From positions 56,357,069 through 56,391,416 of the forward strand of contig NC_068992.1 in assembly GCF_001194135.2 (NCBI RefSeq): 34,348 bases of DNA. Reading direction: 5' to 3'. Within the stretch, counting starts at the first letter, position 1; every line of letters begins with the position of its first letter. Origin of the DNA: Octopus bimaculoides (lineage: Eukaryota). Of this stretch, positions 146 through 34,270 are shown piece by piece. The notes below the pieces were generated by a model. That model saw only the letters and a list, made by a program, of their open reading frames with translations. It did no database searches and was not told the DNA's origin. The position numbers were made by a program, and so were the translations under genes.

Positions 146-860
146 TATTATCTTCTTTTCACAGAACAATGAAACTCGTGCAGAGAAGCAGGATAACAGA
201 AATAAAGGTCAAGCTTATATATGTGTGTTTCTAGTTAAAACCTATTGAACGCCAGCTCCGTGGAAAGGTAAGAACAAACAATTAGGCGTCAATAAATGTC
301 AAAACATTTCTTAACAACAAAAAGAAATGGCGTCTGTACTTTAAGCAATGTGTTTAATTTTCACAGCGCGACCTATCATTTAAGATTTACTAAAAGAAAA
401 AACATTCTTAAGCTTATCTTAATTCCTTCACACANNNNNNNNNNTTTGAATGGTACAACAATGCACTATAATACAAAATATGGACTATATACCTATTGTA
501 ATTTAGTTATCTATAAGTCCGATGATATTTCGGACTACATTTCCTTCTTCAGATATTCTTAGATGGAGTCTCTGCTATAAACTGTTTTCCAACGGCTTTT
601 CTTTTTTCGGAAGCGTCTCAGTAGTGGTCTCACGAAGCCCCTTCCGGAATTCCTCATGAGAAGTGCGTGACGTCGGCTATTTTTCAATCTCATGTGTGTT
701 GGTACATCTGTGGCGCTGCTTCTAAGTTATGTGTTATACGTGCAGCTTCTCTTTTTCCCCCCTTCTTTTTTTTCTCTTTTTTTTTTATAAACAATACATG
801 AGCATGTTATTAAGAATGAACCTACACACATGCAGATGTAGCTAAATAATATATTGATTA

Positions 861-4292: not shown

Positions 4293-5170
4293 NNNNNNNN
4301 NNNNNNNNNNNNNNNNNNNNNNNNNNNNNNNNNNNNNNNNNNNNNNNNNNNNNNNNNNNNNNNNNNNNNNNNNNNNNNNNNNNNNNNNNNNNNNNNNNNN
4401 NNNNNNNNNNNNNNNNNNNNNNNNNNNNNNNNNNNNNNNNNNNNNNNNNNNNNNNNNNNNNNNNNNNNNNNNNNNNNNNNNNNNNNNNNNNNNNNNNNNN
4501 NNNNNNNNNNNNNNNNNNNNNNNNNNNNNNNNNNNNNNNNNNNNNNNNNNNNNNNNNNNNNNNNNNNNNNNNNNNNNNNNNNNNNNNNNNNNNNNNNNNN
4601 NNNNNNNNNNNNNNNNNNNNNNNNNNNNNNNNNNNNNNNNNNNNNNNNNNNNNNNNNNNNNNNNNNNNNNNNNNNNNNNNNNNNNNNNNNNNNNNNNNNN
4701 NNNNNNNNNNNNNNNNNNNNNNNNNNNNNNNNNNNNNNNNNNNNNNNNNNNNNNNNNNNNNNNNNNNNNNNNNNNNNNNNNNNNNNNNNNNNNNNNNNNN
4801 NNNNNNNNNNNNNNNNNNNNNNNNNNNNNNNNNNNNNNNNNNNNNNNNNNNNNNNNNNNNNNNNNNNNNNNNNNNNNNNNNNNNNNNNNNNNNNNNNNNN
4901 NNNNNNNNNNNNNNNNNNNNNNNNNNNNNNNNNNNNNNNNNNNNNNNNNNNNNNNNNNNNNNNNNNNNNNNNNNNNNNNNNNNNNNNNNNNNNNNNNNNN
5001 NNNNNNNNNNNNNNNNNNNNNNNNNNNNNNNNNNNNNNNNNNNNNNNNNNNNNNNNNNNNNNNNNNNNNNNNNNNNNNNNNNNNNNNNNNNNNNNNNNNN
5101 NNNNNNNNNNNNNNNNNNNNNNNNNNNNNNNNNNNNNNNNNNNNNNNNNNNNNNNNNNNNNNNNNNNNNN

Positions 5171-5531: not shown

Positions 5532-5542
5532 NNNNNNNNNNC

Positions 5543-5618
<76 letters not shown>

Positions 5619-5640
5619 CACACACGCACACATATATATG
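5171..5640. repeat. (CA)n, (TATC)n and (TA)n microsatellites around gaps
   Basis: Directly visible, with intervening unique sequence. Confidence 0.9.
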
Positions 5641-5902
5641 TATATGAAAAATGTAAGTGCGCATACATATGAATATATACCTATATATATAGGTGTTTAT
5701 GTCGATAAATATTGACTTGTATACCTGTATATGCATATGTACATAGGTATATGTTTGTTACATTTATGTACTTATACATGCTTATATACATACATTGTTG
5801 TGTCTGTATATGTGTGCGTGTGCGTGTGTATGTGTGTAAGTTTATATATATGTAGATGTTTACGCTGGGCGATTATTTAGTATTAGTAAAATTTAAAATT
5901 TT

Positions 5903-5982
5903 AAAATAAACAATTCTACTCGATTTTCTGGTTGACTATTTTCTCGCTGTCAGCCCGAAAATTGAGTAGAATTGTTTATTTT
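5903..5982 (+). other. 34-bp inverted repeat / pre-miRNA-like hairpin
   Basis: 5903-5936 pairs with 5949-5982 with one T-C mismatch and two G.T wobbles; 12-nt loop. Confidence 0.8.
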
Positions 5983-6233
5983 TCTTTGAAATTCACCCCC
6001 ACGTATATACATGTACAAGATAAAGAAACACAAAAACGTGGAGAAAGAACAAACAAGGGTGTTTAACGCTCGGGAAAATGGAAGAAGTCTATAACGTTTC
6101 ATTATGTATTACACACTAGAATGTATAATATTATATATTGTACACTAGAATGAAAAATGCGAGTGTAGAGTGCTAGAATATTTTTCTGAGATTATTTGGA
6201 AAAGTACAGGTTAAGAAAAAAAAACGTTAAGTG

Positions 6234-6411
6234 GGCGCAGGAGTGGCTGTGTGGTAAGTAACTTGTTTACCAACCACACGGTCCCGGCTTCAGTCCCACT
6301 GCGTGGCACTTTGGGCAAGTGTCTTCTACTATAGCCTCGGGTCGACCAAGGCCTTGTGAGTGGATTTGGTAGACGGAAACTGGAAGAAGCCCGTCGTATA
6401 TGTATATATAA

Positions 6412-6822: not shown

Positions 6823-7035
6823 TCATATATGTATATATATATATANNNNNNNNNNNNNNNNNNNNNNNNNNNNNNNNNNNNNNNNNNNNNNNNNNNNNNN
6901 NNNNNNNNNNNNNNNNNNNNNNNNNNNNNNNNNNNNNNNNNNNNNNNNNNNNNNNNNNNNNNNNNNNNNNNNNNNNNNNNNNNNNNNNNNNNNNNNNNNN
7001 NNNNNNNNNNNNNNNNNNNNNNNNNNNNNNNNNNN

Positions 7036-8974: not shown

Positions 8975-9739
8975 TATCATTATTAATAATGCAGTAGATT
9001 TTACAACACTTAATCTATTTCCGTGAGGTTCTTCCAAAATATGGACACTTTCTTTTGCTCTATGTTGATACTGTTTTAGCGATCAACTGAATGATCAATT
9101 TTTTTTTATTTCTATAAGGTATGAAAGCTATCATACTACATTATGCTTGCTGATATTGTGCTTTCACATTTCTTAATGCGTTTTATAATATATTTATTCA
9201 AGCTGTTTATTCAGTCAGTAACGATTTCTATTATATTCCAGTGATTCAATATGCATTCAATGCCAGAATATAGGCTGGTTCTCGTTTTATTTTCTTCATA
9301 TTCTACAATAGTTTCGTAATCTTCTCTCCCACGTTTCTTTTATTTCTTGTGCTATAATTAAATATTTAAGGATATAAACGATGAAAGCTGCCCCGTTTCA
9401 TTCAGAGGAAATATGCATATTATTTGGCATTTTCAAGGAAGCTGAGAGCGACATTATTTGATATCATATACTTCCGTTTTTCAAATATACTTTCTGTATT
9501 TAATATGAAATATATAAATATTTTATGCAAAAACAAGATTATAGAAAGGAGCAATAGTTTCTCAGGAAATAATAAAATCTTTACAAAAGTTAAAAGTATG
9601 CAAAGGAATATTCTGTAATCACGTATAAAATCCATATGTGGTAATTGCAATAGATTTATTTGCAATAAATACATGGGCAGCTCGCAATTAAAACCTTTGT
9701 GACCCCTCAAAATACTAGGCTTTACTATCGTTGAAGAAT

Positions 9740-10137
9740 TCTCTTTATTTCTTTATTCATTTGTTTCAGACATTTGATTGCAGCCATGCTGGAGCATCGC
9801 CTTTAGTCGAGTAAATCAACCCCAGGACTTATTCTTTGTAACCCTAGTACTTATTCTATCGGTCTCTTCCAAACCACTAGGTTACGCGGACGTAAACACA
9901 CCAGCATCGGTTATCAAGCGATGTTGGGGGGGGGGCAAACACAGACATGCACACACGCACACATATATATACACGATGAGCTTCTTTCAGTTTCCGCCTA
10001 CCAAATCCACTCACAAGGATTTAGTCGGTCCGAGGCTATAGTAGAAGACACTTGCCCAAGGTGCCACGTAGAGTGACTGAACATGGAACCATGTGGTTGG
10101 TAAGCAAGCTACTTACTACACAACCACTCCTGCGCTT
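9740..10137 (-). mobile_element. SINE A, full length, possible 8-bp TSD
   Basis: Head-to-tail homology with the other A copies. Flanks TGAAGAAT (9732-9739) and TGACGAAT (10139-10146) differ at one base. Confidence 0.9.
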
Positions 10138-10150
10138 CTGACGAATGATG

Positions 10151-10242
10151 CGCCCGCAGAAGGACTTGAACCCGCAACCCTCAGATCACTCTTGAGGATA
10201 ACTCTTAAAAGATTGATGATCTACCGACCGAGCTATGCGGGT
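10151..10242 (-). tRNA. tRNA-Lys-TTT: tRNA-Lys(UUU) gene/pseudogene with 19-nt intron at canonical 37/38 position
   Basis: Minus strand ACCCGCATAGCTCGGTCGGTAGATCATCAATCTTTTA[AGAGTTATCCTCAAGAGTG]ATCTGAGGGTTGCGGGTTCAAGTCCTTCTGCGGGCG gives a 73-nt mature form; intron at 10187-10205. Mismatches at 1:72, 11:24, 30:40, 31:39 and 50:64 plus A14G suggest an inactivated copy. Confidence 0.85.
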
Positions 10243-12295
10243 GGACAAATTCTTTGTGAATTTATATTCTAGATAAAGTAAAAACTGCTTCCTACATATA
10301 TATGTGCGTATATAATTCATCATATAACCATATCGGATTACACACAAGTTATCTAACAAGAACATTATAGACGATGGACCAACTTTTTCATTCCAGGTTT
10401 TAGAAAATATAGTCAAACTACTTTTCAAAGATACACTTGACAGACCAAGGAACTTAANNNNNNNNNNNNNNNNNNNNNNNNNNNNNNNNNNNNNNNNNNN
10501 NNNNNNNNNNNNNNNNNNNNNNNNNNNNNNNNNNNNNNNNNNNNNNNNNNNNNNNNNNNNNNNNNNNNNNNNNNNNNNNNNNNNNNNNNNNNNNNNNNNN
10601 NNNNNNNNNNNNNNNNNNNNNNNNNNNNNNNNNNNNNNNNNNNNNNNNNNNNNNNNNNNNNNNNNNNNNNNNNNNNNNNNNNNNNNNNNNNNNNNNNNNN
10701 NNNNNNNNNNNNNNNNNNNNNNNNNNNNNNNNNNNNNNNNNNNNNNNNNNNNNNNNNNNNNNNNNNNNNNNNNNNNNNNNNNNNNNNNNNNNNNNNNNNN
10801 NNNNNNNNNNNNNNNNNNNNNNNNNNNNNNNNNNNNNNNNNNNNNNNNNNNNNNNNNNNNNNNNNNNNNNNNNNNNNNNNNNNNNNNNNNNNNNNNNNNN
10901 NNNNNNNNNNNNNNNNNNNNNNNNNNNNNNNNNNNNNNNNNNNNNNNNNNNNNNNNNNNNNNNNNNNNNNNNNNNNNNNNNNNNNNNNNNNNNNNNNNNN
11001 NNNNNNNNNNNNNNNNNNNNNNNNNNNNNNNNNNNNNNNNNNNNNNNNNNNNNNNNNNNNNNNNNNNNNNNNNNNNNNNNNNNNNNNNNNNNNNNNNNNN
11101 NNNNNNNNNNNNNNNNNNNNNNNNNNNNNNNNNNNNNNNNNNNNNNNNNNNNNNNNNNNNNNNNNNNNNNNNNNNNNNNNNNNNNNNNNNNNNNNNNNNN
11201 NNNNNNNNNNNNNNNNNNNNNNNNNNNNNNNNNNNNNNNNNNNNNNNNNNNNNNNNNNNNNNNNNNNNNNNNNNNNNNNNNNNNNNNNNNNNNNNNNNNN
11301 NNNNNNNNNNNNTATATATATATATATATGAAATATTCCAGCAACATTTCCTAGTAACAAAAATATTTAAAAGCAAATTATCTCCCCTAACGTTTCAAAG
11401 AGTGAAAAATAATAACATGCTAATGTCATCCATTAATGGCGGTTTAATGGCTGAAAGAAGATACAAAATGGAAACTCAATCACTGAAAGAAAATAATATA
11501 TAAAATGTGAATAATGAACAGGAGAGCACTACTGAGAGCAAGGTTACATGACAAACCGATTGTTTTGAAGATATATGCTGGAAGAGTAGGGAGGGGGAAG
11601 TAATTACATGAAAATTACAGGTGTTTAGTTAAAACTAATATAACAAATGATTTATAGTACATAAAGTAAAATGTTTTTACGTTAAGCTTAATGATTTTTC
11701 TGTTCCATAGAAAAGAAATACATAAAAGAATAAGCATCAAATGTAAATAACATAACAACAGCCATTACCATCACGTTAAAGTAACTATTATAACTAATTA
11801 TGATGTTGCCAATGCAACCGAGGTCAGCCTTGGTTTTCTTTTGTTCAGCATCGTTAAAACAAAACACCAGACTAGTATTGGAATCGATATAAACGACTAA
11901 TCCGCATTCGTTTCTAAATTAACGGCCTCATGCTTAAATCAGAAACAAGTGTATTGTTGCGAATTAAAGATAACTACTCTGTGTGCTAGAAATAACAATC
12001 AAATCCTACTTCATTAAAAGAGGCCAGGCCACGTATTATCACATAATCAGGCAAGTTATAGCTGAACAACAGATGTCGACCGAAACAGAAGTAATATCAG
12101 CGATCATAAGTATGTTGAATGAGTGTTGACCTGGGAGATAAACAATAAAAGACAGCAACAGCAACACTATAATAAAGTGCATTACACAGCGTAACACGAT
12201 TTTTCTCCTTGGGTAGCAACTGTTACTTCCTATTTGCCTACGCCTAGAAATTATTAAAAATGGCTAATATTTCCTTCAAACTTTACTTTGGTTAT

Positions 12296-12453: not shown

Positions 12454-13299
12454 AACAATATTTCTGCTTCAGTAACTCAGTGCTGAATCTGTCTGAAGTG
12501 TAATGGAAAATAGGTCAGTTTCAAAACATTGATGTCCAGGTCACAAAAGAAGAGTTTGAAGGGAATAATAGTCATTTCCTTTGATTTCTATATCGAAGCA
12601 AACAGAAAATAAATAACACTTACTGACCGAAGACAAGAAAAGAGTAAAACTTTTGTCAGTGTTATTTGTAATATAATAGCAATATCTGTTGAACAGCAGT
12701 GATGAAAAAACAAAAAAAAACAAACATATTCTTACTACACAGTCACGCCTGCGCCCACATATTTATAACATCTATAACTTCAGGTACATTTCAGACATAG
12801 AGGGAGAGAGAGAGGCAGATAAAATGATACAAATGAATGTTGACCAAAGCTGGTCGTTCTGAGAATTGAACTCATAGCAGAGTGGACTGAAACGAATGTC
12901 ACTATGCATCGAAACCGACACTCTAACAACTCAACATGTTTCCCTACTCAAACTTCCTTGGTATGATGTAATAAATATATCACATAATTTTCGCTCTCTA
13001 TATCTATCAGATGAAATACAATCTCTCATGCCTTCTGTGATATAATAGTCGTATATTTCTTAATTTATCATTTTTCGATTCTATCGAAATGGCAAGCAAC
13101 ACAGTGTAACCAGGTTGTCAAACGTTATAGCTGTTTCATTGCGCCTATCTTCTTTCATAGTTAACGTCTAGTGAGACATACATTCTACTTTTTGTTCTTT
13201 TGTTTCTCTTTGTCGTCAATGATTTGTTTGGAGGTTGAATGAAATGCATGCAGCAGTTATTATCGATTCTAATTACACACACATACATCAATATTCCGA

Positions 13300-13304
<5 letters not shown>

Positions 13305-13350
<46 letters not shown>

Positions 13351-13375
13351 CATTACTATTATTATTACTACTACT
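13305..13375. repeat. (ATT)n
   Basis: Directly visible. Confidence 0.95.
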
Positions 13376-13512
13376 AGTGTTTATTGCCAAAGAATGAAAA
13401 ATCGTGCGCAGATAAGACAAGTTTTGAAGAAACTTGTGCATTGTTATCGTTATTATAAAAGGGGAAAGAAAAATTAATTGCATTCTAGAAATATATATAT
13501 TACACACATATA

Positions 13513-13558
<46 letters not shown>

Positions 13559-13642
13559 ACATCTATCTCTCTCTATATATATACATCTATATACATCTCT
13601 ATCAATATCTATATACATCTATATATATATATATATATATAT
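13513..13642. repeat. (TATC)n/(TA)n
   Basis: Directly visible. Confidence 0.9.
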
Positions 13643-14264
13643 NNNNNNNNNNNNNNNNNNNNNNNNNNNNNNNNNNNNNNNNNNNNNNNNNNNNNNNNNN
13701 NNNNNNNNNNNNNNNNNNNNNNNNNNNNNNNNNNNNNNNNNNNNNNNNNNNNNNNNNNNNNNNNNNNNNNNNNNNNNNNNNNNNNNNNNNNNNNNNNNNN
13801 NNNNNNNNNNNNNNNNNNNNNNNNNNNNNNNNNNNNNNNNNNNNNNNNNNNNNNNNNNNNNNNNNNNNNNNNNNNNNNNNNNNNNNNNNNNNNNNNNTAT
13901 ACATGCATATACATATAGGGAAGGCTATAAATCAAATGCCATCAACTGAGTGATGGAAATGTAGTCATAAAAAAGAATTACAGCCTCAAAGCTACAAGAC
14001 GATATAACATATATTTTCTCATTTCTTGCTTTTCATATGCGGTGAATGGTTAGAACATTAAAAATCATTCCCACCATCTATCTTATCAGATTTATTTAAA
14101 ATCCACCGAGGGTAAATTTATATGTAATCCATTTAAATTCGATAAGATAACAAACGAGAATTTAATGACAAGTGACTGTACATCGTCTCCATAAAACCTG
14201 GCATTTCGTTGTTTTTTATTTTTTATTTTTACCAATTAAAAATGAAAATCAGTGTTACCTATTG

Positions 14265-15874: not shown

Positions 15875-16699
15875 GTTACACTCGAGTTTATAATAGCACA
15901 CACTTATCCAGTGTAGGAAACTAAAACTGAACCCGAAATTTCGTGGTAGAGAAGCAAAGTTTTTTTAACTATACAGCGATGCCTACAATATTTATTGTCG
16001 TTGATATATCTTCCTCTATTTGACTCAATTTCTATCGATCTATAGACTTGTCAGCATATTATTCAATAGTTCAGTTCGATAAATAGAGTTAATAACTGCA
16101 ACGTTTCTCTTAGAATTATTTCCCAACATGATAAAACTCTTTTAAGTTTAATCAAGACTGCTCGGCAACATCTGAGCCCAAGGGCTACGAGATAAAGAAA
16201 AATAAAGTATAACTCTATAAACGCTGTAGTCGAGAGACACATCTATGACGTATTTCAATCTGCTTGGTATAACAGGGAAATTTCTGTTTGGCCATATCAA
16301 ACGCTTCAATACAAGAAGCAAAACAAGGAGAGCAAAGCTGAAATATCTTTGATCTATGACCATAAATTTGCTCGATCAGGGATAATCTGGGGCTCACTGA
16401 CAATACAACAACAACAACACAACAGCAGCAAAAATAACAGCAGTCTTTTGCCTGTTTACAACAGTATACAGTACCTCAACAGAGTGCTATAAAGAAGTAT
16501 GTAGACCGAATCGTGTGACTGATTCTAATTTAAGTTTGCTTTGATCACAGCACAATGCATCTGCGTTGTTCTCCACTCAAACTGCTCATTCAAAATTTGT
16601 TCGTCTGAAGGTGAACATATTTCTCAATTTCTTCCTTATAAATTTCAAAGTCAGCAAAAGTGTATTGTTCTTGTAGAAGGTGTCTTAACCAGTATGCAC

Positions 16700-16850
16700 A
16701 AGCGTGACTGTGTGGTAAGAAGCTTGTCTTCCACCCACATGGTTCTGGGTTCAGTCCTACTGCTTGGGACACTGAACAAGTGTCTTCTATTATATCCTCG
16801 GACCGACCAGTCTTGCGATTGAATTTGGTAGGCGGAAACTGAAAGAAGTT
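16700..16850 (+). mobile_element. SINE A 5' half (diverged)
   Basis: GTGACTGTGTGGTAAG...GGGTTCAGTCC...CAAGTGTCTTCTA...GGAAACTGAAAGAAG. Confidence 0.85.
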
Positions 16851-17774
16851 CTTTCACTGTATATGATAGCTATTGTAGTAATGACTTGATTTGATCAAAA
16901 ACCATTTATGGGATATCGCGTATAATTATAGAGTGTCGTGTATTGTGGAATAATGTGTAATATCTCAACGTCTAAATTGGAAATACATGAAAGGAAAAGG
17001 TATCGCTCTCAGATCCCAAGGAAGGTGAGTTCAATCTCATTAGAAGGTTGACTCGTAGTTGGGCAAGATATTTAAAAAAAAATTATGATTGAATAACTTG
17101 GCATTGAATATGTTGTTGGTATTGATGTGTTGCCACTGATTAACCTTAATCCAGAAGACACTCATACTCCAGTCAATTCCATTTGCGAACGTTCAATCTT
17201 TTCTTTTAGACAGTGTGTTTTGGACGATATTATCCAATGAGCATGCATTTTGTAAAGATGGCAAAGCATGTGCTAAATGTGTTTTAAGATGGCAGAGTTT
17301 GTGTTTAATAATGGTTGAGTAGCAGTCAGTGAATACGTACAAGCTTTGCAGTAGTTAGTGAGCTACAAAGTAGGATCTCTTATTGATTTGTGAGTTCTTC
17401 AGGTCAATAACCAATAACACGGCAGACTTTATGATGCATTTCAAGTGAAAATTACATTGCTTCTCACTGACCAAGATAAATTAGTTCTTTTGTTGTGGTT
17501 ATTGTTTAACGTGTTTAACGCAGCAAGCCCTCATCAAAGCCATTGTCAGGTGACCTAGTTAGGGTAGTAAATATCAGATAATCGATATACAATTGTGGGT
17601 ACTTTACCAAAAATATTTACCGACAATTATCCAATATGATCGAACTGGAGTTAAGTAGCGGCTAAATGGACTCTTTCTTAATCGACAAAGAATTGTCTAA
17701 ATATCGTTCGTAATGTGTTCATTGTGACAGGACACGCATGCAATACGTCTCACTATATCTACAGTAATGTTGAA

Positions 17775-17898: not shown

Positions 17899-18372
17899 NN
17901 NNNNNNNNNNNNNNNNNNNNNNNNNNNNNNNNNNNNNNNNNNNNNNNNNNNNNNNNNNNNNNNNNNNNNNNNNNNNNNNNNNNNNNNNNNNNNNNNNNNN
18001 NNNNNNNNNNNNNNNNNNNNNNNNNNNNNNNNNNNNNNNNNNNNNNNNNNNNNNNNNNNNNNNNNNNNNNNNNNNNNNNNNNNNNNNNNNNNNNNNNNNN
18101 NNNNNNNNNNNNNNNNNNNNNNNNNNNNNNNNNNNNNNNNNNNNNNNNNNNNNNNNNNNNNNNNNNNNNNNNNNNNNNNNNNNNNNNNNNNNNNNNNNNN
18201 NNNNNNNNNNNNNNNNNNNNNNNNNNNNNNNNNNNNNNNNNNNNNNNNNNNNNNNNNNNNNNNNNNNNNNNNNNNCCTTGAAAATTTCATGACAAACACG
18301 TAATGATTGTAAAAAAAGGCTCTTTAGGTTCCTTCGTCGACCCAATGGAATAGAAAGGGAAGGGAAATATCG

Positions 18373-18606: not shown

Positions 18607-18779
18607 TATATATATATAGATAGATATATACACGATAGGATGCTTTCAGTTTCCGTCTACAAGGCTTTAGTCGGCCCGAGGGTATAGTAGAAGACACTTG
18701 CCCACGGCACCATGCAGAGGGACTGAACCCGGAACCATGTGGTTGGGAAGCAAACTTCATACCACGCAGCCACGCCTAC
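18373..18779 (-). mobile_element. SINE A, near full length
   Basis: Tail ATTCTTTTATTCTTTTAACTTGTTTCAGTCATTTG through head ACCACGCAGCCACGCCT; internal (CA)n/(TA)n. Confidence 0.9.
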
Positions 18780-21755: not shown

Positions 21756-22979
21756 NNNNNNNNNNNNNNNNNNNNNNNNNNNNNNNNNNNNNNNNNNNNN
21801 NNNNNNNNNNNNNNNNNNNNNNNNNNNNNNNNNNNNNNNNNNNNNNNNNNNNNNNNNNNNNNNNNNNNNNNNNNNNNNNNNNNNNNNNNNNNNNNNNNNN
21901 NNNNNNNNNNNNNNNNNNNNNNNNNNNNNNNNNNNNNNNNNNNNNNNNNNNNNNNNNNNNNNNNNNNNNNNNNNNNNNNNNNNNNNNNNNNNNNNNNNNN
22001 NNNNNNNNNNNNNNNNNNNNNNNNNNNNNNNNNNNNNNNNNNNNNNNNNNNNNNNNNNNNNNNNNNNNNNNNNNNNNNNNNNNNNNNNNNNNNNNNNNNN
22101 NNNNNNNNNNNNNNNNNNNNNNNNNNNNNNNNNNNNNNNNNNNNNNNNNNNNNNNNNNNNNNNNNNNNNNNNNNNNNNNNNNNNNNNNNNNNNNNNNNNN
22201 NNNNNNNNNNNNNNNNNNNNNNNNNNNNNNNNNNNNNNNNNNNNNNNNNNNNNNNNNNNNNNNNNNNNNNNNNNNNNNNNNNNNNNNNNNNNNNNNNNNN
22301 NNNNNNNNNNNNNNNNNNNNNNNNNNNNNNNNNNNNNNNNNNNNNNNNNNNNNNNNNNNNNNNNNNNNNNNNNNNNNNNNNNNNNNNNNNNNNNNNNNNN
22401 NNNNNNNNNNNNNNNNNNNNNNNNNNNNNNNNNNNNNNNNNNNNNNNNNNTATATATATATTCTTCAGCATGAATAGTACTGACAGTGACTTTGAAGTTT
22501 CGGCAAGCTAAGCCATTATCGGTCTGTGATGCGTTAAGTGAATTTTGTATTTATATAGTCTCTGTTGAGATAACATTTTTCTGGGGTTTGTGAGATTCAG
22601 TTGAATGGTAGTGCGATTACAGGGATGGTTCGTGGTGAAGAGGTATTGTGGAGAAATATATATTGATTAAATTAGGGGTTATGTTATTGTTCAGAATTCA
22701 TTTTATAGTCCGCAGAGATATCATAAAGTAGATGTGGCAACGGGAATAAGATATGAATTAAGCAATAAAGTGAAAAATGTATATTCTTTGCACCATAGAC
22801 GCTGGTCGCACAACTTAAAATTTGTAGGTACAATAAGGCTCGCACATTACCTCACAGTCCCATCCCCACCCTGTTGACATGATCCAGAGATAAACCAGGG
22901 CAAGATATCCAGTCTCAATATGGGTTGCAGGATCAGGAGGTGGGGTGAAAAAATCTCGAGCGAAACAACCAAAATCTAA

Positions 22980-23017
<38 letters not shown>

Positions 23018-23651
23018 NNNNNNNNNNNNNNNNNNNNNNNNNNNNNNNNNNNNNNNNNNNNNNNNNNNNNNNNNNNNNNNNNNNNNNNNNNNNNNNNNNN
23101 NNNNNNNNNNNNNNNNNNNNNNNNNNNNNNNNNNNNNNNNNNNNNNNNNNNNNNNNNNNNNNNNNNNNNNNNNNNNNNNNNNNNNNNNNNNNNNNNNNNN
23201 NNNNNNNNNNNNNNNNNNNNNNNNNNNNNNNNNNNNNNNNNNNNNNNNNNNNNNNNNNNNNNNNNNNNNNNNNNNNNNNNNNNNNNNNNNNNNNNNNNNN
23301 NNNNNNNNNNNNNNNNNNNNNNNNNNNNNNNNNNNNNNNNNNNNNNNNNNNNNNNNNNNNNNNNNNNNNNNNNNNNNNNNNNNNNNNNNNNNNNNNNNNN
23401 NNNNNNNNNNNNNNNNNNNNNNNNNNNNNNNNNNNNNNNNNNNNNNNNNNNNNNNNNNNNNNNNNNNNNNNNNNNNNNNNNNNNNNNNNNNNNNNNNNNN
23501 NNNNNNNNNNNNNNNNNNNNNNNNNNNNNNNNNNNNNNNNNNNNNNNNNNNNNNNNNNNNNNNNNNNNNNNNNNNNNNNNNNNNNNNNNNNNNNNNNNNN
23601 NNNNNNNNNNNNNNNNNNNNNNNNNNNNACACACACACACACACACATATG

Positions 23652-23810
23652 TACGGCAGGTTTCTTTCAGTCTCCTTCATCAAAAACATTCACAAGGCTT
23701 TGGTCGGCCCGAGGCTATAATAGAAGACCCCTACTCAAGGTGCCACGTAGTGGGACTGAACTCAGAACCATGTGGTTAGGAACCAAACTTTTTACGACAC
23801 AGTCACGCCT
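23652..23810 (-). mobile_element. SINE A 5' half
   Basis: GGTCGGCCCGAGGCTATAATAGAAGAC...GTGCCACGTAGTGGGACTGAAC...CACAGTCACGCCT. Confidence 0.9.
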
Positions 23811-24912: not shown

Positions 24913-25697
24913 CGTCTTCTCTCTTCATTGACTACAACCTTCGTATTTCTCCACTTCAAAGCGTCATAGTTGTTCAGTTTTTTCTTCTTTCTCATTGACC
25001 CTGTTGCTACAGTGACATGCGATGTCGATTATCATGCATGTTCTTTCTTTTTGTTCCCCCCCCCCCCCCCTCAGTAATGTCCGGTTTCTGATGTCTGGTC
25101 AAGTGATCGCACTGAATCATTGCACCCCAACAGACTTTGCAATTTTCATTCTCGTGACTCCTTCTGGGACATACTCATACCACGTCTTTGCTCTATGTAG
25201 ACCGTGATTTCCACTGAGGTCCCAATGGATTATTTTTGCCACATTGTCATGTCGTCTTTTGTATTCGCGTTGTGCCAGTTTCGGGCATTCGCTAATCATG
25301 TGCCATACCGTTTCATACCTCTCATCAGACATTCTGCATTTGTCGCTGTCGGTAGTGTTGTCGATTCTGCACTCCACATAGTCCTTAACTCTTGTTCCTG
25401 AGTTGTGCATATAAGTGCTTCTGTCTCTATAGTCAGGTCACTCTTTCTCATCCATAGCCACCGATCTTCCGTATCTGTCTTGGCGTTCGTATCGCTTGCA
25501 AACTAGCCGTACATTTTTTCCTTCCTCGCTGTTTCATTTTTAGAGTGTTCTTTTCCTCGTTAAGGATTTCTTTCTTTACACAGTTATCAGTTTTAATGAC
25601 GGTGGCCTTCTAACATGTTTCAACAATAATGGTTCCACGGCACGTTTTGCATACCACCCTAAACTGTTTTCCTCTGCCTCAATACAGTCCTGACAAC
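24913..25697 (-). mobile_element. R4/Dong-clade non-LTR retrotransposon C-terminal fragment (CCHC finger + restriction-like endonuclease)
   Basis: Joined frames: EAEENSLGWY / RWLWMRKSDLTIETEALIC / KCRMSDERYETVWHMISECPKLAQREYKRRHDNVAKIIHWDL..WYEYVPEGV / ENENCKVCWGAMIQCDH..KPDI / KKERTCMIIDIAC / KLNNYDALKW-EIRRL*SMKR. Confidence 0.9.
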
Positions 25698-25841: not shown

Positions 25842-27006
25842 TTAAAATTTTTGAGTTTAATTAAATAAATACCTAATGTAGCATATAACATACATGTAGT
25901 TTTAAAATATCATTTCTACTNNNNNNNNNNNNNNNNNNNNNNNNNNNNNNNNNNNNNNNNNNNNNNNNNNNNNNNNNNNNNNNNNNNNNNNNNNNNNNNN
26001 NNNNNNNNNNNNNNNNNNNNNNNNNNNNNNNNNNNNNNNNNNNNNNNNNNNNNNNNNNNNNNNNNNNNNNNNNNNNNNNNNNNNNNNNNNNNNNNNNNNN
26101 NNNNNNNNNNNNNNNNNNNNNNNNNNNNNNNNNNNNNNNNNNNNNNNNNNNNNNNNNNNNNNNNNNNNNNNNNNNNNNNNNNNNNNNNNNNNNNNNNNNN
26201 NNNNNNNNNNNNNNNNNNNNNNNNNNNNNNNNNNNNNNNNNNNNNNNNNNNNNNNNNNNNNNNNNNNNNNNNNNNNNNNNNNNNNNNNNNNNNNNNNNNN
26301 NNNNNNNNNNNNNNNNNNNNNNNNNNNNNNNNNNNNNNNNNNNNNNNNNNNNNNNNNNNNNNNNNNNNNNNNNNNNNNNNNNNNNNNNNNNNNNNNNNNN
26401 NNNNNNNNNNNNNNNNNNNNNNNNNNNNNNNNNNNNNNNNNNNNNNNNNNNNNNNNNNNNNNNNNNNNNNNNNNNNNNNNNNNNNNNNNNNNNNNNNNNN
26501 NNNNNNNNNNNNNNNNNNNNNNNNNNNNNNNNNNNNNNNNNNNNNNNNNNNNNNNNNNNNNNNNNNNNNNNNNNNNNNNNNNNNNNNNNNNNNNNNNNNN
26601 NNNNNNNNNNNNNNNNNNNNNNNNNNNNNNNNNNNNNNNNNNNNNNNNNNNNNNNNNNNNNNNNNNNNNNNNNNNNNNNNNNNNNNNNNNNNNNNNNNNN
26701 NNNNNNNNNNNNNNNNNNNNNNNNNNNNNNNNNNNNNNNNNNNTATATATATATACATACATACACACACACACACACACATATATATACACATATTTAT
26801 ATGAACTGAATAATATCAGAAGTGCTATTGAACAATCGAATTAGCGGAAGTGGGGTTTGTCTGGTAACACATGAAATCTGTAAATCTATTCACTGTAGTT
26901 ATCTTTAACTTGTATTGTCTCCTCTTTTGATCTCTGGTACCTTGATCTTTGATTGAAGTATTACCAACCCACACTTATTCATATACATACCTATATGTGT
27001 AGGTCT

Positions 27007-27316: not shown

Positions 27317-27415
27317 GTATGTATGTACGTATGTATGTATGTATGTATGTATGTATGTATGTATGTATGTATGTATGTATGTATGTATGTATATAATATA
27401 TATACATACATACAT
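27317..27415. repeat. (TATG)n
   Basis: Directly visible. Confidence 0.95.
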
Positions 27416-28071
27416 AGAAATATAAAAAGATATAAGGAGCAAAGATACTGAAGATTCAGTATACATTACGTGGCAAAATTATGAGTTGAAAATATGTGGA
27501 ATTTTTTTTTTTAAAAGTGGAAGAGAAATACCTTCGTTTCACATAGTTTAATATCTTTTTATAAATATATAGATATTATATGGATGTCGCGAAATCCAAC
27601 CGGTTTTCGCTATTTAAATTAGCTTTGCAATGGACATTGTACAGTAATGAATTCTCGTGACAGAGGGGTCTTGTCATTTTGGATGTTTGAAAAATAAGAA
27701 TGAGTCTAGAGAGTGAACCAAGGGAAGCAGCTGGTGGCAAGGGGGACAACTGGCTCCTTAATATAATTTTTAAAATGGTGAAATTTGTATTTTGAGGTAT
27801 GGTCTGTACTTTTGTATGAACAGTTTTCTTTGTTTAGGCGTTCTTGTACTGAGATTGAATCTTTGCACTGGTATAATGGGAAGATATGAAAATTTGGCGT
27901 TTTATTACTTGCGCATCTGCCGATATGTCCGCTCAGTGCTATCTGCCTGTATTGAGGGAAACGAATCTGTTTTTATGCAGCGTGACTCTGCGTCTCAAAG
28001 TAAGGCTCGTTTGGCCCACATAATTGTGACCACAACCTGAGAAGGTTAGAACATAGATAAGCTTCTGGGAA

Positions 28072-28113: not shown

Positions 28114-28404
28114 AGTGAAAATACGAAAATAACGAAGAACAAAAAACATAAAACAATGAAACTAGGGCGAAATTACCCGTCTGATGTCCCACTGATCTTT
28201 GGAGGAAGACAAAATGATCCCCATAAAGTTAGAGGCAGAATATAAACAACATACAAAGCAGATTATTCATCTTCGTCTGTGGTTTCGTTATTTTCCTTTC
28301 GTACTTTCACTGAGTTTGAGAATTTCCGCATATAATTACTATTTCTTCATCTTCGCACGACGAAAGTATGGTACTAAAAGTTCGGGCTGTTAGGAGGCGA
28401 AATG

Positions 28405-28557
28405 TTTGCTCGTCTATTTCTGACATTCTTTAGTAAAAAGACATTCGATGCAATACAAAATAGGTTCAGACATTCCATAATCCAAGAATGTGGGATCCTA
28501 TCGTACGCCTTGCGATANNNNNNNNNNATGGCTAAGTTAGTTTTCCTCCTCTGGCAA
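28405..28557 (-). mobile_element. R4/Dong-clade RT fragment
   Basis: CQRRKTNLA[gap]YRKAYDRIPHSWIMECLNLFCIASNV..LLKN matches the (W)IDYxKAYD.VPHSW motif of RLE-clade RTs. Confidence 0.85.
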
Positions 28558-28571
28558 GGAGGAGAACTAAC

Positions 28572-28688
28572 TTCCGCCGCTGCCGCCGTTTCCACCGCTG
28601 CCGCCGCTGCCGCCGCTGCCGCCGCTGCCGCCGCTACTGCCACCACCACCACCACTACCACCTCTACTACTACTACTACTACTACAAC
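28572..28688. repeat. Compound (GCCGCCGCT)n-(ACC)n-(ACT)n microsatellite
   Basis: Directly visible. Confidence 0.95.
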
Positions 28689-28927
28689 ATTATTCTCAAG
28701 ATAATTTTTGCAATATATATGCACATATGCATACTAAGGCATACACATATGCATACACACAGACACAAACACACTCACACACACACGCATATACCGAATC
28801 CCATAAAATGCTTTAATATCCATTGATTAAATTGTAACAAGATTTGTCATAAATATGATACTTCAAACCAGAATCGAAGATGTGTGACATATTATATATT
28901 TGTCTTTTGTGATTAGTTTTTTTCAGC

Positions 28928-31639: not shown

Positions 31640-31743
31640 GTAAATATTCTAACAGTATACGCATTAGTATATGTATGTGTATCTCTGTGTACATGCGTAT
31701 GTACATAGATATGCGTTTATATACAGAAATATATGCATATGCG

Positions 31744-31775
<32 letters not shown>

Positions 31776-32442
31776 TATGCACACACACTCACACATTTAT
31801 GTATGTATGTATCTATGCATGTGTGTTTTACTCAGTACTCTTCATTTTCGTCGGAGAGTTGCTAGAGGCTGTTGTTATGATAGACCAAAGTCTTCAGCTC
31901 GCCCTTCCCAGTAAACACTTCGCGAAATTACTGCTGAAAACTCACATACAACTTCTTGGAATCGGATATTACGTGTCCACGCACTGCGCTCCGAACAGCG
32001 ATAAAGACGAAGCATAAAACTACACGTTTATTGAAGGTGGTGCAGAGAGAAAAATCAACCTTTAGTGGACATGACTTTCTCCCAGTGGAAATAAGACATT
32101 CGAAATGTCGCCTCATTAAGAAAATGATTGATGCGAGAAATTATCTGAAATGGATAAAGGCTTTTAACAATAAGTGTCAACTGGATCGTACAAGCTCATT
32201 AATCAACATTACACAATGCAAGAAATGTAATAAATTTAGATAAGAAAATTTGAAAAGATGAAGCAATAGCACGTATAATGAATATAGATAAAAACGGAAA
32301 ACAAATGACTAGAATACAGTATTGCGGTTACTGATTGTCAACAGAGTAAATGAAATGTATTGTAAGAATATAAGAATGGTAAATTGCAAACGAATCGAAA
32401 GTTTGAATTATGTAAGACTACTTACTGATTCCAGGCGATTAA

Positions 32443-32700
32443 CAGAGAAAATAATTGCAAATTAATGTGAAGTGGCTACATGAGTAAGGAAACTCCTTTG
32501 AACAAAATTACGAAACTCTTCTTGTTTATAGCAGAGAAATGGATTGCAAATTAGCGTGAAGTGGCTACATGAGTTAGAAAACTTCTTTGAACAAAATCAC
32601 GAAACTGTTGTTTATAGCAGAAAAAAGAATGTGAAATTAACATGAGGTGGTTACATGAATTAGAAAACTCCTTTGAACAAAATTATGAAACTTTTTATGT
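32443..32700. repeat. Minisatellite, ~3 units of 86-89 bp
   Basis: GAAGTGGCTACATGAG-like anchors at 32469, 32558 and 32644. Confidence 0.9.
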
Positions 32701-32757
32701 TTGTGGTAAATAAAAGTAAATACTAATTTAGTAGAAAATTTAGCTTTATTTTTCATG

Positions 32758-32831
32758 AAAATAAACTAAATCTAGCACTTCTTTATTCTAAATAAAAATA
32801 AACTAAACCTAGCCCTTGTTTGTCCTAAATA
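32758..32831. repeat. 37-bp tandem duplication
   Basis: ATAAACTAAA(T/C)CTAGC at 32761 and 32798. Confidence 0.8.
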
Positions 32832-33611
32832 GAACTAAAAACTGTAACCTACCACTAAATGAATGCTATCAAATAGTTAAGTGCTTTCAGTTGAGATATT
32901 TAAATGCTTGTACTACTTTTAGCTAGTGTATCCGAGCAGATGCGAATAAAAGTAAGAAAAATATGGAAGACTTTGTCAGAAGGAGAATAAAACATTTGAG
33001 CTGAACGATGTGTTAATGGTATTCTAGATGTTAATCTCGGTTTTAGAACTGTTTAATCTTGTAATGCCGGAATGGGTTTTTAATCCGAATAACAGTCAAT
33101 TGAATTGCAGTGGGCCGTACAACGCTTTTTCTCAAGTAGGAAATCTTCATCAAGACAACGATCAATAGGTCAAATGTTTTGTTGAAGTACAACATAGAAA
33201 ATCCTCGTGAGAACGGCGGTGAGGTAAGCGATGAAATATGTTCATTAAAGGATACAATATTTTCCACTATCCGACCAAAGTATTTGCTAGAAAAGACAGA
33301 ACTCTTGTCACCTTAAGACATATAAATTTGATGTTTACTGATGCAGACCTCTAATTAGTCCCCACGAGCTGGGTGCTAGTTGCTGATTGATAGTTACGTG
33401 ACATAGAAGCGTAGTAGATATATGTGGAGCAATATATAGTCTGAGTAGTATAATTTGTATTTGATAAATGAATCATATATAACATGAAATATCACCAAAG
33501 TTGTAACTTTATATCAGTCTATATATTTCGTTAGATTGGTCTCAAGGAAGGCAATGCGTCTATGGCTCTCCAAGGCTGGTAAAACAGATACCTTTAGTGC
33601 TCCCTTCAAGC

Positions 33612-34270
33612 AGCTACAGTCCGAATAGTGATTGGTGACGAGAAATGTGTTCTCTATAAAAATGTCAGGCGCCGAAGACAGTGGGTAAGGAAAGGAGAAA
33701 CACCGCCATACCAGGCTAAAGCAGGTCTGCACCCACGCAAGGTATTGGTATCTGTTTGGGGGGATATGAAATGTTTAATCCACTTTGAACTTTTAAACCC
33801 AAACCAAACGATAACAAAAGAGATCTACTGTGAGAAGCTTGAGAGGTTTAAGTCAGCGCCAGAAGAAAAATGATCATCTTTGGTTTCAAGACGAAAGGTG
33901 TTCTTCCATCAAGATAATGCTCGGCCATTTACAGCGAGGATGACATTACAAAAAGGCTGCAGTAGTTTGAATGAGTGACGATGCCCCACCCATCATATTC
34001 GCGGACATTGCCCAATCTGATTATCTTTTATTCTATAGTCTTCAAAATCATTTGGACAGAAAAATATGAATTCTGTAGACGATGTCAGAACAGTACTGGA
34101 GTAGTATATTTTGTCACGGACAAGTAAATTTTGCAAGTCTACCAGATAGATGAAAGAGCATTGCAGAAAACGAAGAAGAGTATATTTTAGATTTAAAAAG
34201 TACTTTGTTTATCTTAATTTTGAAAAATAAAATATTAAAAAACCGCCTTATTTATGCGATGACCAAATTA
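33612..34270 (+). mobile_element. Mariner-family (Tc1/mariner) transposon, 3' half, defective
   Basis: RIVIGDEKCVLY..RQW..LHPRKVLVSVWGD..FFHQDNARP..PHPSYS..SDYLLFYSLQNHL with stops and frameshifts. Right-TIR-like AAAAACCGCCTTATTTATGCGATGACCAAAT followed by TA at about 34238-34270. Confidence 0.92.

What the first reader, a model, noticed from the sequence alone, without database searches (positions are those of the whole stretch)
10151..10242. Intron-containing tRNA-Lys(UUU) with intact splice architecture
Seen: a 19-nt insert exactly at 37/38. The intron 3' end AAGAG-TG pairs with anticodon-loop C32-U36 (C32 with the antepenultimate G), leaving the 3-nt bulge (U, G, A38) that TSEN requires. 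The acceptor pair C6-G67 is a compensatory variant. Established: animal tRNA introns are known mainly in Tyr(GUA), Leu(CAA), Ile(UAU) and Arg(UCU), whereas Lys(UUU) introns are typical of fungi. Inference: this lineage has, or had, an intron-bearing Lys(UUU) family that could yield a circular intron RNA. This copy looks decayed, and the retained intron implies DNA-level duplication or a pre-tRNA template.
Basis: partly seen in the sequence, partly recalled or inferred. Interest (0 to 1): 0.75.

Follow-up and report, generated by a model that had tools for sequence, protein, structure and literature searches.

The report
Decayed intron-bearing lysine tRNA pseudogene
This is a dead copy of a lysine tRNA gene in an octopus-like genome that still carries a textbook tRNA intron, which hints that this lineage has or had intron-containing tRNA-Lys(UUU) genes, unusual for animals; that could not be checked genome-wide here.

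Summary
On the minus strand, 10151-10242 is a 92-nt tRNA-Lys(UUU)-like sequence with a 19-nt insert (10187-10205) at the canonical 37/38 site. It scores 24.2 bits on Rfam tRNA, below the gathering score of 29. ARAGORN does not call it by default, even with the insert removed. Seven point repairs make ARAGORN call tRNA-Lys(ttt) with a 19-nt intron at 37/38. With the anticodon stem repaired, the minimum-energy fold is the standard eukaryotic pre-tRNA: a C32-G proximal pair, a 5-bp anticodon-intron helix, a 3-nt bulge at the 3' splice site and a small intron hairpin. About 1% of random or shuffled 19-mers give this geometry, and only 2 of 72 junctions fit the site, so a chance indel is unlikely. 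The copy is dead. It has a broken anticodon stem, D-stem, T-stem and 1-72 pair, and G at position 14. An octopod CORE-type SINE lies 15 nt downstream, and the first T4 run is 439 nt away. It is the only tRNA-like sequence in the window. The lineage-level claim, a live Lys(UUU) intron family and circular introns, could not be tested because no cephalopod genome was searchable. The best reading is a pseudogene of an intron-bearing Lys(UUU) gene. Interest is modest.

The parts
10151..10242 (-). tRNA-Lys(UUU)-like pseudogene, 92 nt (73-nt tRNA body plus 19-nt insert)
   Evidence: Rfam tRNA 24.2 bits, full-length alignment. It is the only tRNA hit in the window. ARAGORN calls it only in relaxed mode. 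61/73 identical to human Lys-TTT after the insert is removed.
10206..10242 (-). 5' exon, tRNA positions 1-37, including anticodon TTT at 10207-10209
   Evidence: Read directly from the sequence and from the ARAGORN drawing of the repaired version. Disabling changes: A1 (mismatch with C72), G14, U24 (mismatch with C11), A30 and U31 (mismatches with C40 and U39).
10187..10205 (-). 19-nt intron AGAGUUAUCCUCAAGAGUG at the canonical 37/38 site
   Evidence: With the stem repaired, the minimum-energy fold gives the proximal C32-G pair, a 5-bp anticodon-intron helix, a 3-nt 3' bulge and a 3-bp intron hairpin. Chance is about 1%.
10151..10186 (-). 3' exon, tRNA positions 38-73 (discriminator G73)
   Evidence: The T-stem has a C50.U64 mismatch and a G51.U63 wobble. 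The 3' strand of the acceptor stem pairs with positions 2-7.
10224..10235 (-). A-box-like internal Pol III promoter element, TAGCTCGGTCGG (positions 8-19)
   Evidence: Sequence compared with the known tRNA A-box consensus TRGCNNAGTGG (my own knowledge). It has G in place of the universal A14.
10162..10172 (-). B-box GGTTCAAGTCC (positions 52-62), intact
   Evidence: Sequence. Identical to the human Lys-TTT T-loop region.
10136..10150 (-). 15-nt 3' trailer CATCATTCGTCAGAA between the tRNA end and the SINE; no T-run and no CCA
   Evidence: ATTCGTCA (10139-10146) resembles ATTCTTCA (9732-9739) just past the SINE tail, a possible target-site duplication (7 of 8 bases, tentative).
9740..10135 (-). 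About 400-bp tRNA-derived CORE-type SINE inserted just downstream of the tRNA-like sequence
   Evidence: Four other copies lie in the window at 77-86% identity (6235-6407+, 16696-16851+, 18624-18777-, 23630-23810-); none has the Lys-like sequence upstream. A peptide translated from SINE copy 6211-6504 hits only an Argonauta hians protein. The copy at 9740-10135 matches that Argonauta locus at 88% over 95 bp.
10260..10266 (-). TATAAAT at -24 to -18 upstream of tRNA position 1
   Evidence: Sequence. The genome is AT-rich, so this may be chance.
9709..9712 (-). First run of at least 4 T downstream of the tRNA-like sequence (+439 nt), beyond the SINE

Best explanation
This is a dead nuclear pseudogene of an intron-containing tRNA-Lys(UUU) gene in an octopod-like genome.

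How the parent gene worked (inferred): Pol III transcribed it from the internal A and B boxes. The intron's 3' part (AAGAG) paired with anticodon-loop positions 32-36. That placed the 3' splice site in a 3-nt bulge and the 5' splice site in a small bulge next to a 3-bp intron hairpin. TSEN cut at 37|i1 and i19|38, and RTCB joined the exons. The 19-nt intron was then degraded or possibly circularised.

What happened to this copy: it arose or stayed at the DNA level. It has no CCA, no poly(A) and it keeps the intron. It then picked up at least seven disabling substitutions. A SINE inserted 15 nt downstream and pushed the nearest terminator about 440 nt away.

Shown: the sequence, the Lys(UUU) identity, the insert position, the pairing geometry and the decay.
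Inferred: that the insert was a functional intron in a parent gene, and that such genes exist or existed elsewhere in the genome.
For: 1. Rfam tRNA aligns full length with about 21 nt inserted in the anticodon loop.
2. The spliced sequence matches Lys-TTT best: 61/73, against 52/73 or fewer for eight other human tRNAs.
3. Seven point repairs (G1, A14, G24, G30, A31, C63, G64) make ARAGORN report tRNA-Lys(ttt) with a 19-nt intron at 37-38.
4. Two of those repairs, restoring the 5' strand of the anticodon stem, are enough for the minimum-energy fold to become the canonical pre-tRNA anticodon-intron structure.
5. That geometry satisfies the regularities described for all 16 Drosophila intronic tRNAs: a C-G proximal pair, an invariant 3-nt proximal bulge, and 6 nt from the proximal-pair C to the end of the exon (PMC6614914).
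6. The geometry arises in about 0.6-2.2% of random inserts, and the site is 2 of 72 possible junctions. Jointly that is about 3e-4.
7. The actual sequence fails detection even when spliced and does not fold as a cloverleaf, so it is a pseudogene.
8. There is no CCA and no A-tail after position 73, so it is not a retrocopy of a mature tRNA.
Against: Only one copy was seen. No second Lys-like sequence lies in the 29 kb of non-N window. No related genome could be searched, so the parent family is inferred and not observed. A 6-nt direct repeat (AAGAGT, twice) spans the loop/insert boundary and the insert's 3' end, so part of the insert could come from a local duplication. The exons are about 10% decayed, yet every pair of the intron structure is intact. 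That is compatible with chance in 19 nt but is slightly surprising.
Confidence: 0.78

Rival explanations
1. Private indel. An intronless tRNA-Lys(UUU) gene or pseudogene acquired a 19-nt insertion or local duplication in its anticodon loop, and this only happens to look like an intron. No intron-bearing Lys(UUU) family ever existed.
For: The copy is unique in the window. It is a decaying pseudogene in which indels are tolerated. The AAGAGT direct repeat at the insert's 5' boundary and near its 3' end hints at slippage or duplication. Covariance models score any anticodon-loop insert as an 'intron'.
Against: The site (2 of 72 junctions) and the splice geometry (about 1% of random or shuffled inserts) jointly give about 3e-4. 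The insert also forms the distal 3-bp hairpin expected of a bulge-helix-bulge-like motif.
Confidence: 0.1
2. Repeat-family head. The sequence is a copy of a tRNA-Lys-derived mobile element and not a decayed single gene. Candidates are a SINE such as the octopus OK family of Ohshima and Okada 1994 (the tRNA-Lys origin of OK is recalled from memory), or a tRNA-bearing TRIM/Helenus LTR.
For: Cephalopod genomes hold very many tRNA-derived loci, about 17,000 in the giant squid (PMC6962438). Octopus tRNA-derived SINE families are described (refs in PMC4758252 and PMC4824008). Molluscan Helenus LTRs carry tRNA-Lys-TTT-like sequences (PMC10886601). The A and B boxes are kept while the stems are lost, a pattern typical of SINE heads (PMC8450103).
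Against: There is no second copy in the window, whereas the neighbouring SINE has five. The full 3' acceptor strand pairs with positions 2-7 (6 of the 7 acceptor pairs), which is unusual for SINE heads. What follows after 15 nt is an independent SINE with its own head, and its other copies lack the Lys sequence. No LTR-like second repeat is present. Helenus has been reported in bivalves, not in cephalopods. Even if this rival were true, the founder would still have been an intron-bearing Lys(UUU) template.
Confidence: 0.1
3. A still-functional but atypical intron-containing tRNA-Lys(UUU) gene.
For: The B box is intact, the A box is nearly intact, a TATA-like element sits at -24, and the anticodon and the intron helix are intact.
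Against: It scores below the Rfam gathering score. ARAGORN rejects it even when spliced. It has an A1.C72 mismatch, G14 in place of the universal A14, mismatches in the D, anticodon (two) and T stems, and no terminator for 439 nt.
Confidence: 0.02

Closest known systems
Canonical eukaryotic tRNA introns (TSEN/RTCB substrates), e.g. Drosophila and human Tyr-GUA, Ile-UAU, Leu-CAA and Arg-UCU genes
   Same: Position 37/38. Length is within the known 6-133 nt range (PMC4090602). A C32-G proximal (A-I) pair, a 3-nt bulge at the 3' splice site, 6 nt from the proximal-pair C to the exon end, and a relaxed bulge-helix-bulge-like fold (PMC6614914, PMC10485636).
   Different: The isoacceptor is Lys(UUU), which is not among the introns reported as widely conserved in Metazoa (bioRxiv 10.1101/2025.06.17.660180; PMC12168002). 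This copy's mature domain is broken, so it is not itself a plausible substrate.
Fungal tRNA-Lys(UUU) intron-containing genes (S. cerevisiae tK(UUU))
   Same: The same isoacceptor carries a short intron at 37/38. Yeast has 10 spliced tRNA species, Lys-UUU among them (PMC6582322, PMC13079951).
   Different: The exons here are of the animal type (84% identical to human Lys-TTT). No comparison with the fungal intron sequence was run. Whether the shared presence reflects ancestry or independent gain is unknown.
tRNA pseudogenes and tRNA-derived SINE heads of cephalopods
   Same: The internal promoter boxes are kept, cloverleaf pairing is lost, the covariance score is sub-threshold, and the element sits among SINEs (PMC8450103, PMC6962438).
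   Different: It is single-copy in the window and has a complete acceptor 3' strand. It has no attached tRNA-unrelated body or tail of its own, and it carries an intron.

Membership tests
Functional eukaryotic nuclear tRNA gene | Covariance-model score at or above the curated threshold, and a cloverleaf with paired stems | tested here: not met
   24.2 bits against a gathering score of 29. ARAGORN gives no call, with the intron or spliced. The minimum-energy fold is not a cloverleaf, z = -1.6. Mismatches at 1-72, 11-24, 30-40, 31-39 and 50-64.
Functional eukaryotic nuclear tRNA gene | Pol III terminator (at least 4 T) shortly downstream | tested here: not met
   The first T4 run is 439 nt downstream, beyond an inserted SINE.
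Functional eukaryotic nuclear tRNA gene | Internal A and B box promoter elements | tested here: met
   TAGCTCGGTCGG (A box, with G14) and GGTTCAAGTCC (B box) are read from the sequence. The consensus is from my own knowledge.
tRNA-Lys(UUU) isoacceptor | UUU anticodon at positions 34-36 and a body most similar to Lys-UUU tRNAs | tested here: met
   ARAGORN calls tRNA-Lys(ttt) after repair. 61/73 identical to human Lys-TTT, against 52/73 for Lys-CTT and 50/75 or fewer for seven others (references written from memory, no isotype-specific model available).
Canonical eukaryotic tRNA intron (TSEN substrate) | Intron located between positions 37 and 38 | tested here: met
   The alignment equally allows 38/39 because of the flanking A.
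Canonical eukaryotic tRNA intron (TSEN substrate) | Proximal anticodon-intron base pair (position 32 with intron -3) and a 3-nt bulge holding the 3' splice site | tested here: met
   C32-G17i, with a bulge of U18i, G19i and A38. This is the minimum-energy fold once the anticodon stem is repaired. Random expectation is 0.6-2.2%.
Canonical eukaryotic tRNA intron (TSEN substrate) | Intact mature domain and anticodon stem, needed for TSEN to measure the splice sites | tested here: not met
   In this copy, pairs 30-40 and 31-39 are mismatched, and the actual sequence does not adopt the motif. This is expected to hold only for the inferred parent.
Canonical eukaryotic tRNA intron (TSEN substrate) | Intron actually excised, with spliced tRNA and linear or circular intron detectable | not testable with these tools
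   This needs tRNA-seq, northern blot or RT-PCR on tissue.
Canonical eukaryotic tRNA intron (TSEN substrate) | Intron shared by other gene copies of the isodecoder family or by related species | tested here: inconclusive
   No other copy in the window. Metagenome scans returned 0 hits even when intronless animal Lys-UUU genes were allowed. The protein-database proxy found no candidates. No cephalopod genome was searchable.
tRNA-derived SINE | Multi-copy element: tRNA-related head joined to its own tRNA-unrelated body and tail, flanked by target-site duplications | tested here: not met
   Single copy in the window, against five copies of the neighbouring SINE. The downstream SINE has its own head, and its other copies lack the Lys sequence. 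Genome-wide copy number was not testable.
Helenus/TRIM (tRNA-bearing LTR retrotransposon) | Two LTRs each carrying the tRNA-like sequence, with a primer-binding site and polypurine tract between them, and 4-bp target-site duplications | tested here: not met
   No second copy of 10136-10300 in the window. The family is described in bivalves, not cephalopods (PMC10886601). A solo LTR cannot be excluded.

The most novel reading that the evidence does not exclude
Octopods, and perhaps cephalopods or molluscs more widely, carry a live family of intron-containing tRNA-Lys(UUU) genes. That would be a fourth or fifth intron class in an animal lineage, outside the metazoan-wide Tyr-GUA/Ile-UAU/Leu-CAA set and shared only with fungi. 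It would point either to retention from the opisthokont ancestor or to a lineage-specific intron gain. It could go with an intron-dependent step in maturation of the U34 anticodon, or with a 19-nt circular intron RNA.
Probability: 0.45. Interest if true: 0.5.

Novelty: new member of a known kind. Interest (0 to 1): 0.3.

Why it matters
tRNA introns in animals are thought to be confined largely to a few isoacceptors, where they direct intron-dependent anticodon modifications. A Lys(UUU) intron in a cephalopod would add a data point on how tRNA introns are gained, lost or retained across Metazoa, and would give a new substrate for studying tricRNA formation. The locus is a pseudogene, so its value is as a pointer: one tRNAscan-SE run on the source genome would settle whether the family exists. 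It also shows that default tRNA finders miss such copies and that relaxed ones mislabel them. Relaxed ARAGORN called this one 'tRNA-Stop(tta)'.

Tried and rejected
1. ARAGORN default and Rfam at gathering threshold found nothing. Relaxed ARAGORN called the locus 'tRNA-Stop(tta)' without an intron, and also gave two obvious false positives with 354- and 1375-nt 'introns'.

2. Two scans of JGI metagenome contigs used animal-type Lys-UUU patterns. The first required an insert. The second also allowed intronless genes as a positive control. Both gave 0 hits, so that collection says nothing either way.

3. Protein-database proxy. The strand antisense to the tRNA is an open reading frame (10093-10272). 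I searched its tRNA part, plus 'repaired' variants, for spurious ORFs lying over intron-bearing Lys genes in other assemblies. No candidate shared even three 5-mers. Unannotated eukaryotic ORFs are evidently not in that database.

4. An exact look-up of a window ORF, to find the source record, was not on record.

5. Ten literature searches found no report of Lys(UUU) introns in molluscs or any other animal. The supplement of PMC12168002, which tabulates intron frequency per tRNA species, is not held. PMC46908 (squid SINE) is not held.

6. The Helenus consensus file was searched for the Lys-type T-arm and for the intron. Only fungal elements matched the T-arm motif, and nothing matched the intron.

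7. One Argonauta hians locus (20 kb) was fetched and scanned. It holds a fragment of the SINE but no tRNA-Lys.

8. Pfam scans of eight window ORFs gave no hits, so no host gene is available to anchor an orthologous locus.

9. Considered and rejected: an Arg-UCU or Ile-UAU intron gene with a mutated anticodon (body only about 61% identical); and a retrocopy of mature tRNA (the intron is present and there is no CCA).

Full report
WHAT IS THERE

The feature lies on the minus strand. Read 5' to 3', 10242 down to 10151 is ACCCGCATAGCTCGGTCGGTAGATCATCAATCTTTTA-AGAGTTATCCTCAAGAGTG-ATCTGAGGGTTGCGGGTTCAAGTCCTTCTGCGGGCG.

- Default ARAGORN finds no tRNA in the window.
- Rfam at gathering threshold finds nothing.
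- In E-value mode the Rfam tRNA model aligns over its full length (positions 1-71), with about 21 nt inserted in the anticodon loop. The score is 24.2 bits against a gathering score of 29. E is 0.019 on 1 kb and 0.66 on the whole window.
- It is the only tRNA-like hit in the window. All the other sub-threshold hits there are below their gathering scores and lie mostly in microsatellite-rich stretches.

IDENTITY

With the 19 nt removed, the sequence is 61/73 identical to human tRNA-Lys-TTT. It is 52/73 identical to Lys-CTT and 50/75 or fewer to seven other human tRNAs, including the intron-bearing Tyr-GUA, Ile-UAU and Arg-UCU (the reference sequences are from memory, so this is indicative only). 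The anticodon is TTT at 10207-10209. An Arg-UCU or Ile-UAU gene with a mutated anticodon is therefore excluded.

DECAY

- The actual sequence is not called by ARAGORN, with or without the insert.
- Its minimum-energy fold is not a cloverleaf; z = -1.6 against shuffles.
- Seven substitutions restore a perfect cloverleaf: G1, A14, G24, G30, A31, C63 and G64.
- ARAGORN then reports tRNA-Lys(ttt), 73 bases, 'Intron Length: 19, Intron Insertion Position(37-38)'.
- So the copy is about 10% diverged from a functional form. It has mismatches at 1-72, 11-24, 30-40, 31-39 and 50-64, and it has lost the universal A14.

THE INSERT AS AN INTRON

I repaired only the 5' strand of the anticodon stem (UCAAU to UCAGA). 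The minimum-energy structure of positions 27-43 plus the insert then becomes the textbook eukaryotic pre-tRNA anticodon-intron domain:

- a 5-bp anticodon stem;
- a helix C32-G17i, U33-A16i, U34-G15i, U35-A14i, U36-A13i;
- a 3-nt bulge (U18i, G19i, A38) that contains the 3' splice site;
- a 2-nt bulge (A37, A1i) at the 5' splice site;
- a 3-bp hairpin, G2A3G4/C10U11C12.

This matches the regularities reported for all 16 Drosophila intronic tRNAs: a C-G proximal pair, an invariant 3-nt proximal bulge, and 6 nt from the proximal-pair C to the last exon base (PMC6614914). It also matches the conserved A-I pair described for TSEN substrates (PMC10485636).

Chance was estimated with composition-matched random 19-mers:

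- the proximal pair plus at least 4 bp arises in 2.2% by rule;
- it arises in 0.6% as the minimum-energy fold;
- shuffles of the insert itself give 1.0%;
- the insertion site fits 2 of 72 possible junctions, the ambiguity coming from the flanking A.

Jointly this is about 3e-4. I therefore accept that the insert is an inherited tRNA intron and not a random indel. One caveat remains: AAGAGT occurs twice, at the loop/intron boundary and at the intron's 3' end. Part of the intron could therefore have a duplicative origin.

SURROUNDINGS

- The sequence downstream of position 73 is CATCATTCGTCAGAA. It has no CCA and no T-run.
- A SINE of about 400 bp then begins (10135 down to about 9740, minus strand).
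- Four other copies of this SINE lie in the window at 77-86% identity. None has the Lys-like sequence upstream of it. The Lys element is therefore not part of the SINE.
- A weak candidate target-site duplication flanks the SINE: ATTCGTCA and ATTCTTCA.
- The first run of at least 4 T after the tRNA is 439 nt away, just past the SINE. The SINE thus separated the gene from its likely terminator.
- TATAAAT lies at -24. In an AT-rich genome this may be chance.
- An 855-nt N gap starts 215 nt upstream.

The window is a gap-rich draft scaffold: 12 N runs and 35% GC. Eight ORFs gave no Pfam hits. A peptide translated from one SINE copy hits a single database protein, 'hypothetical protein Ahia01_000201400 [Argonauta hians]' (77% identity, E = 4e-9). 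That Argonauta locus holds an 88%-identical fragment of the SINE next to the tRNA. The source is therefore an octopod or a close relative. By its conserved central sequence the SINE resembles the CORE-SINE type, to which the octopus OR family is assigned in the literature (the resemblance is my own reading).

WHAT COULD NOT BE DONE

The key question is whether other Lys(UUU) genes of this lineage carry the intron. That needs a cephalopod genome, and none was reachable.

- Metagenome scans with animal-type Lys-UUU patterns returned nothing, even when intronless genes were allowed.
- A protein-database proxy, using the open antisense frame across the tRNA, found no candidates.
- The literature held here has no report of Lys(UUU) introns in any animal. 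The Lys-UUU intron papers found are all about yeast.
- GtRNAdb was said in 2024 to hold only Aplysia among molluscs.

INTERPRETATION

The best-supported reading is a DNA-level pseudogene of an intron-containing tRNA-Lys(UUU) gene (confidence about 0.78).

- The parent's mechanism is inferred from the conserved architecture: Pol III transcription, anticodon-intron pairing, TSEN cleavage and RTCB ligation.
- This copy is almost certainly inert as a tRNA. Its B box is intact and its A box nearly so, so it might still recruit Pol III and read through into the SINE. That was not tested.
- Rivals are a private insertion that mimics an intron (about 0.10), a low-copy tRNA-Lys-derived repeat family (about 0.10), and a still-functional gene (about 0.02).

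VERDICT

- Its local interpretation is sound except for 'intact' splice architecture, because the anticodon stem beneath the motif is broken.
- Its lineage-level inference is plausible but untested.

The finding is a pointer, not a discovery. It is a new member of a known kind: a canonical tRNA intron in an isoacceptor that is unusual for animals. Interest is modest (0.3). It would rise to about 0.5 if a live intron-bearing Lys(UUU) family is shown in cephalopods.

Noticed in passing
window 9740-10135 (-), 6235-6407 (+), 16696-16851 (+), 18624-18777 (-), 23630-23810 (-): Five copies of a tRNA-derived, CORE-like SINE at 77-86% identity, apparently in two subfamilies (5' ends GCGCAGGAGTGG or AGGCGTG). 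A peptide translated from one copy matches an annotated 'hypothetical protein' of Argonauta hians, which looks like a SINE fragment mis-annotated as a gene.
   Followed up: partly
window 10136-10150 and 9732-9739: A SINE inserted only 15 nt downstream of the tRNA-like sequence, with a weak candidate target-site duplication (ATTCGTCA / ATTCTTCA). It separates the tRNA from the nearest T4 run. Whether SINEs here prefer Pol III gene neighbourhoods is unknown.
   Followed up: partly
window 435-444, 1423-2069, 4293-5170, 5532-5541, 6846-7035, 10458-11312, 13643-13897, 17899-18275, 21756-22450, 23018-23628, 25921-26743, 28518-28527: Twelve runs of N (5361 of 34348 bases), mostly bordered by microsatellites. 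The window is a draft scaffold. One gap starts 215 nt upstream of the tRNA-like sequence, so more distant 5' context is missing.
   Followed up: yes
window 25117-25410 (-) and 28374-28724 (-): Two ORF fragments that look, from memory of their motifs (…ECPKLAQREYKRRHDNVAK… and …YRKAYDRIPHSWIMECL…), like pieces of non-LTR retrotransposon reverse transcriptases. Pfam gave no hit, and the first is not on record as a called gene.
   Followed up: partly
window 32443-32692 and 32744-32839: Tandem repeats with 86-bp units (2.9 copies, 83% matches) and 37-bp units (2.6 copies). Nature unknown.
   Followed up: no
window 31663-31826, 27328-27419, 5574-5984, 2067-2151 and others: Several dozen sub-threshold Rfam 'miRNA' hits (mir-297, mir-466, mir-1277, mir-3149 and others). 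All are far below their gathering scores and cluster in a few microsatellite-rich stretches, so they are most likely artefacts of low-complexity sequence.
   Followed up: yes
window 12629-14088 (-) and 33280-33726 (-): Relaxed-threshold ARAGORN calls 'tRNA-Pyl' with a 1375-nt intron (which spans an N gap) and 'tRNA-Trp' with a 354-nt intron. Both are treated as false positives. Neither is supported by Rfam.
   Followed up: partly
window 10187-10211 (-): The hexamer AAGAGT occurs twice, 13 nt apart: at A37 plus intron 1-5, and at intron 13-18. The following bases are partly similar as well (9 of 13). This may be a trace of how the intron arose or grew.
   Followed up: no
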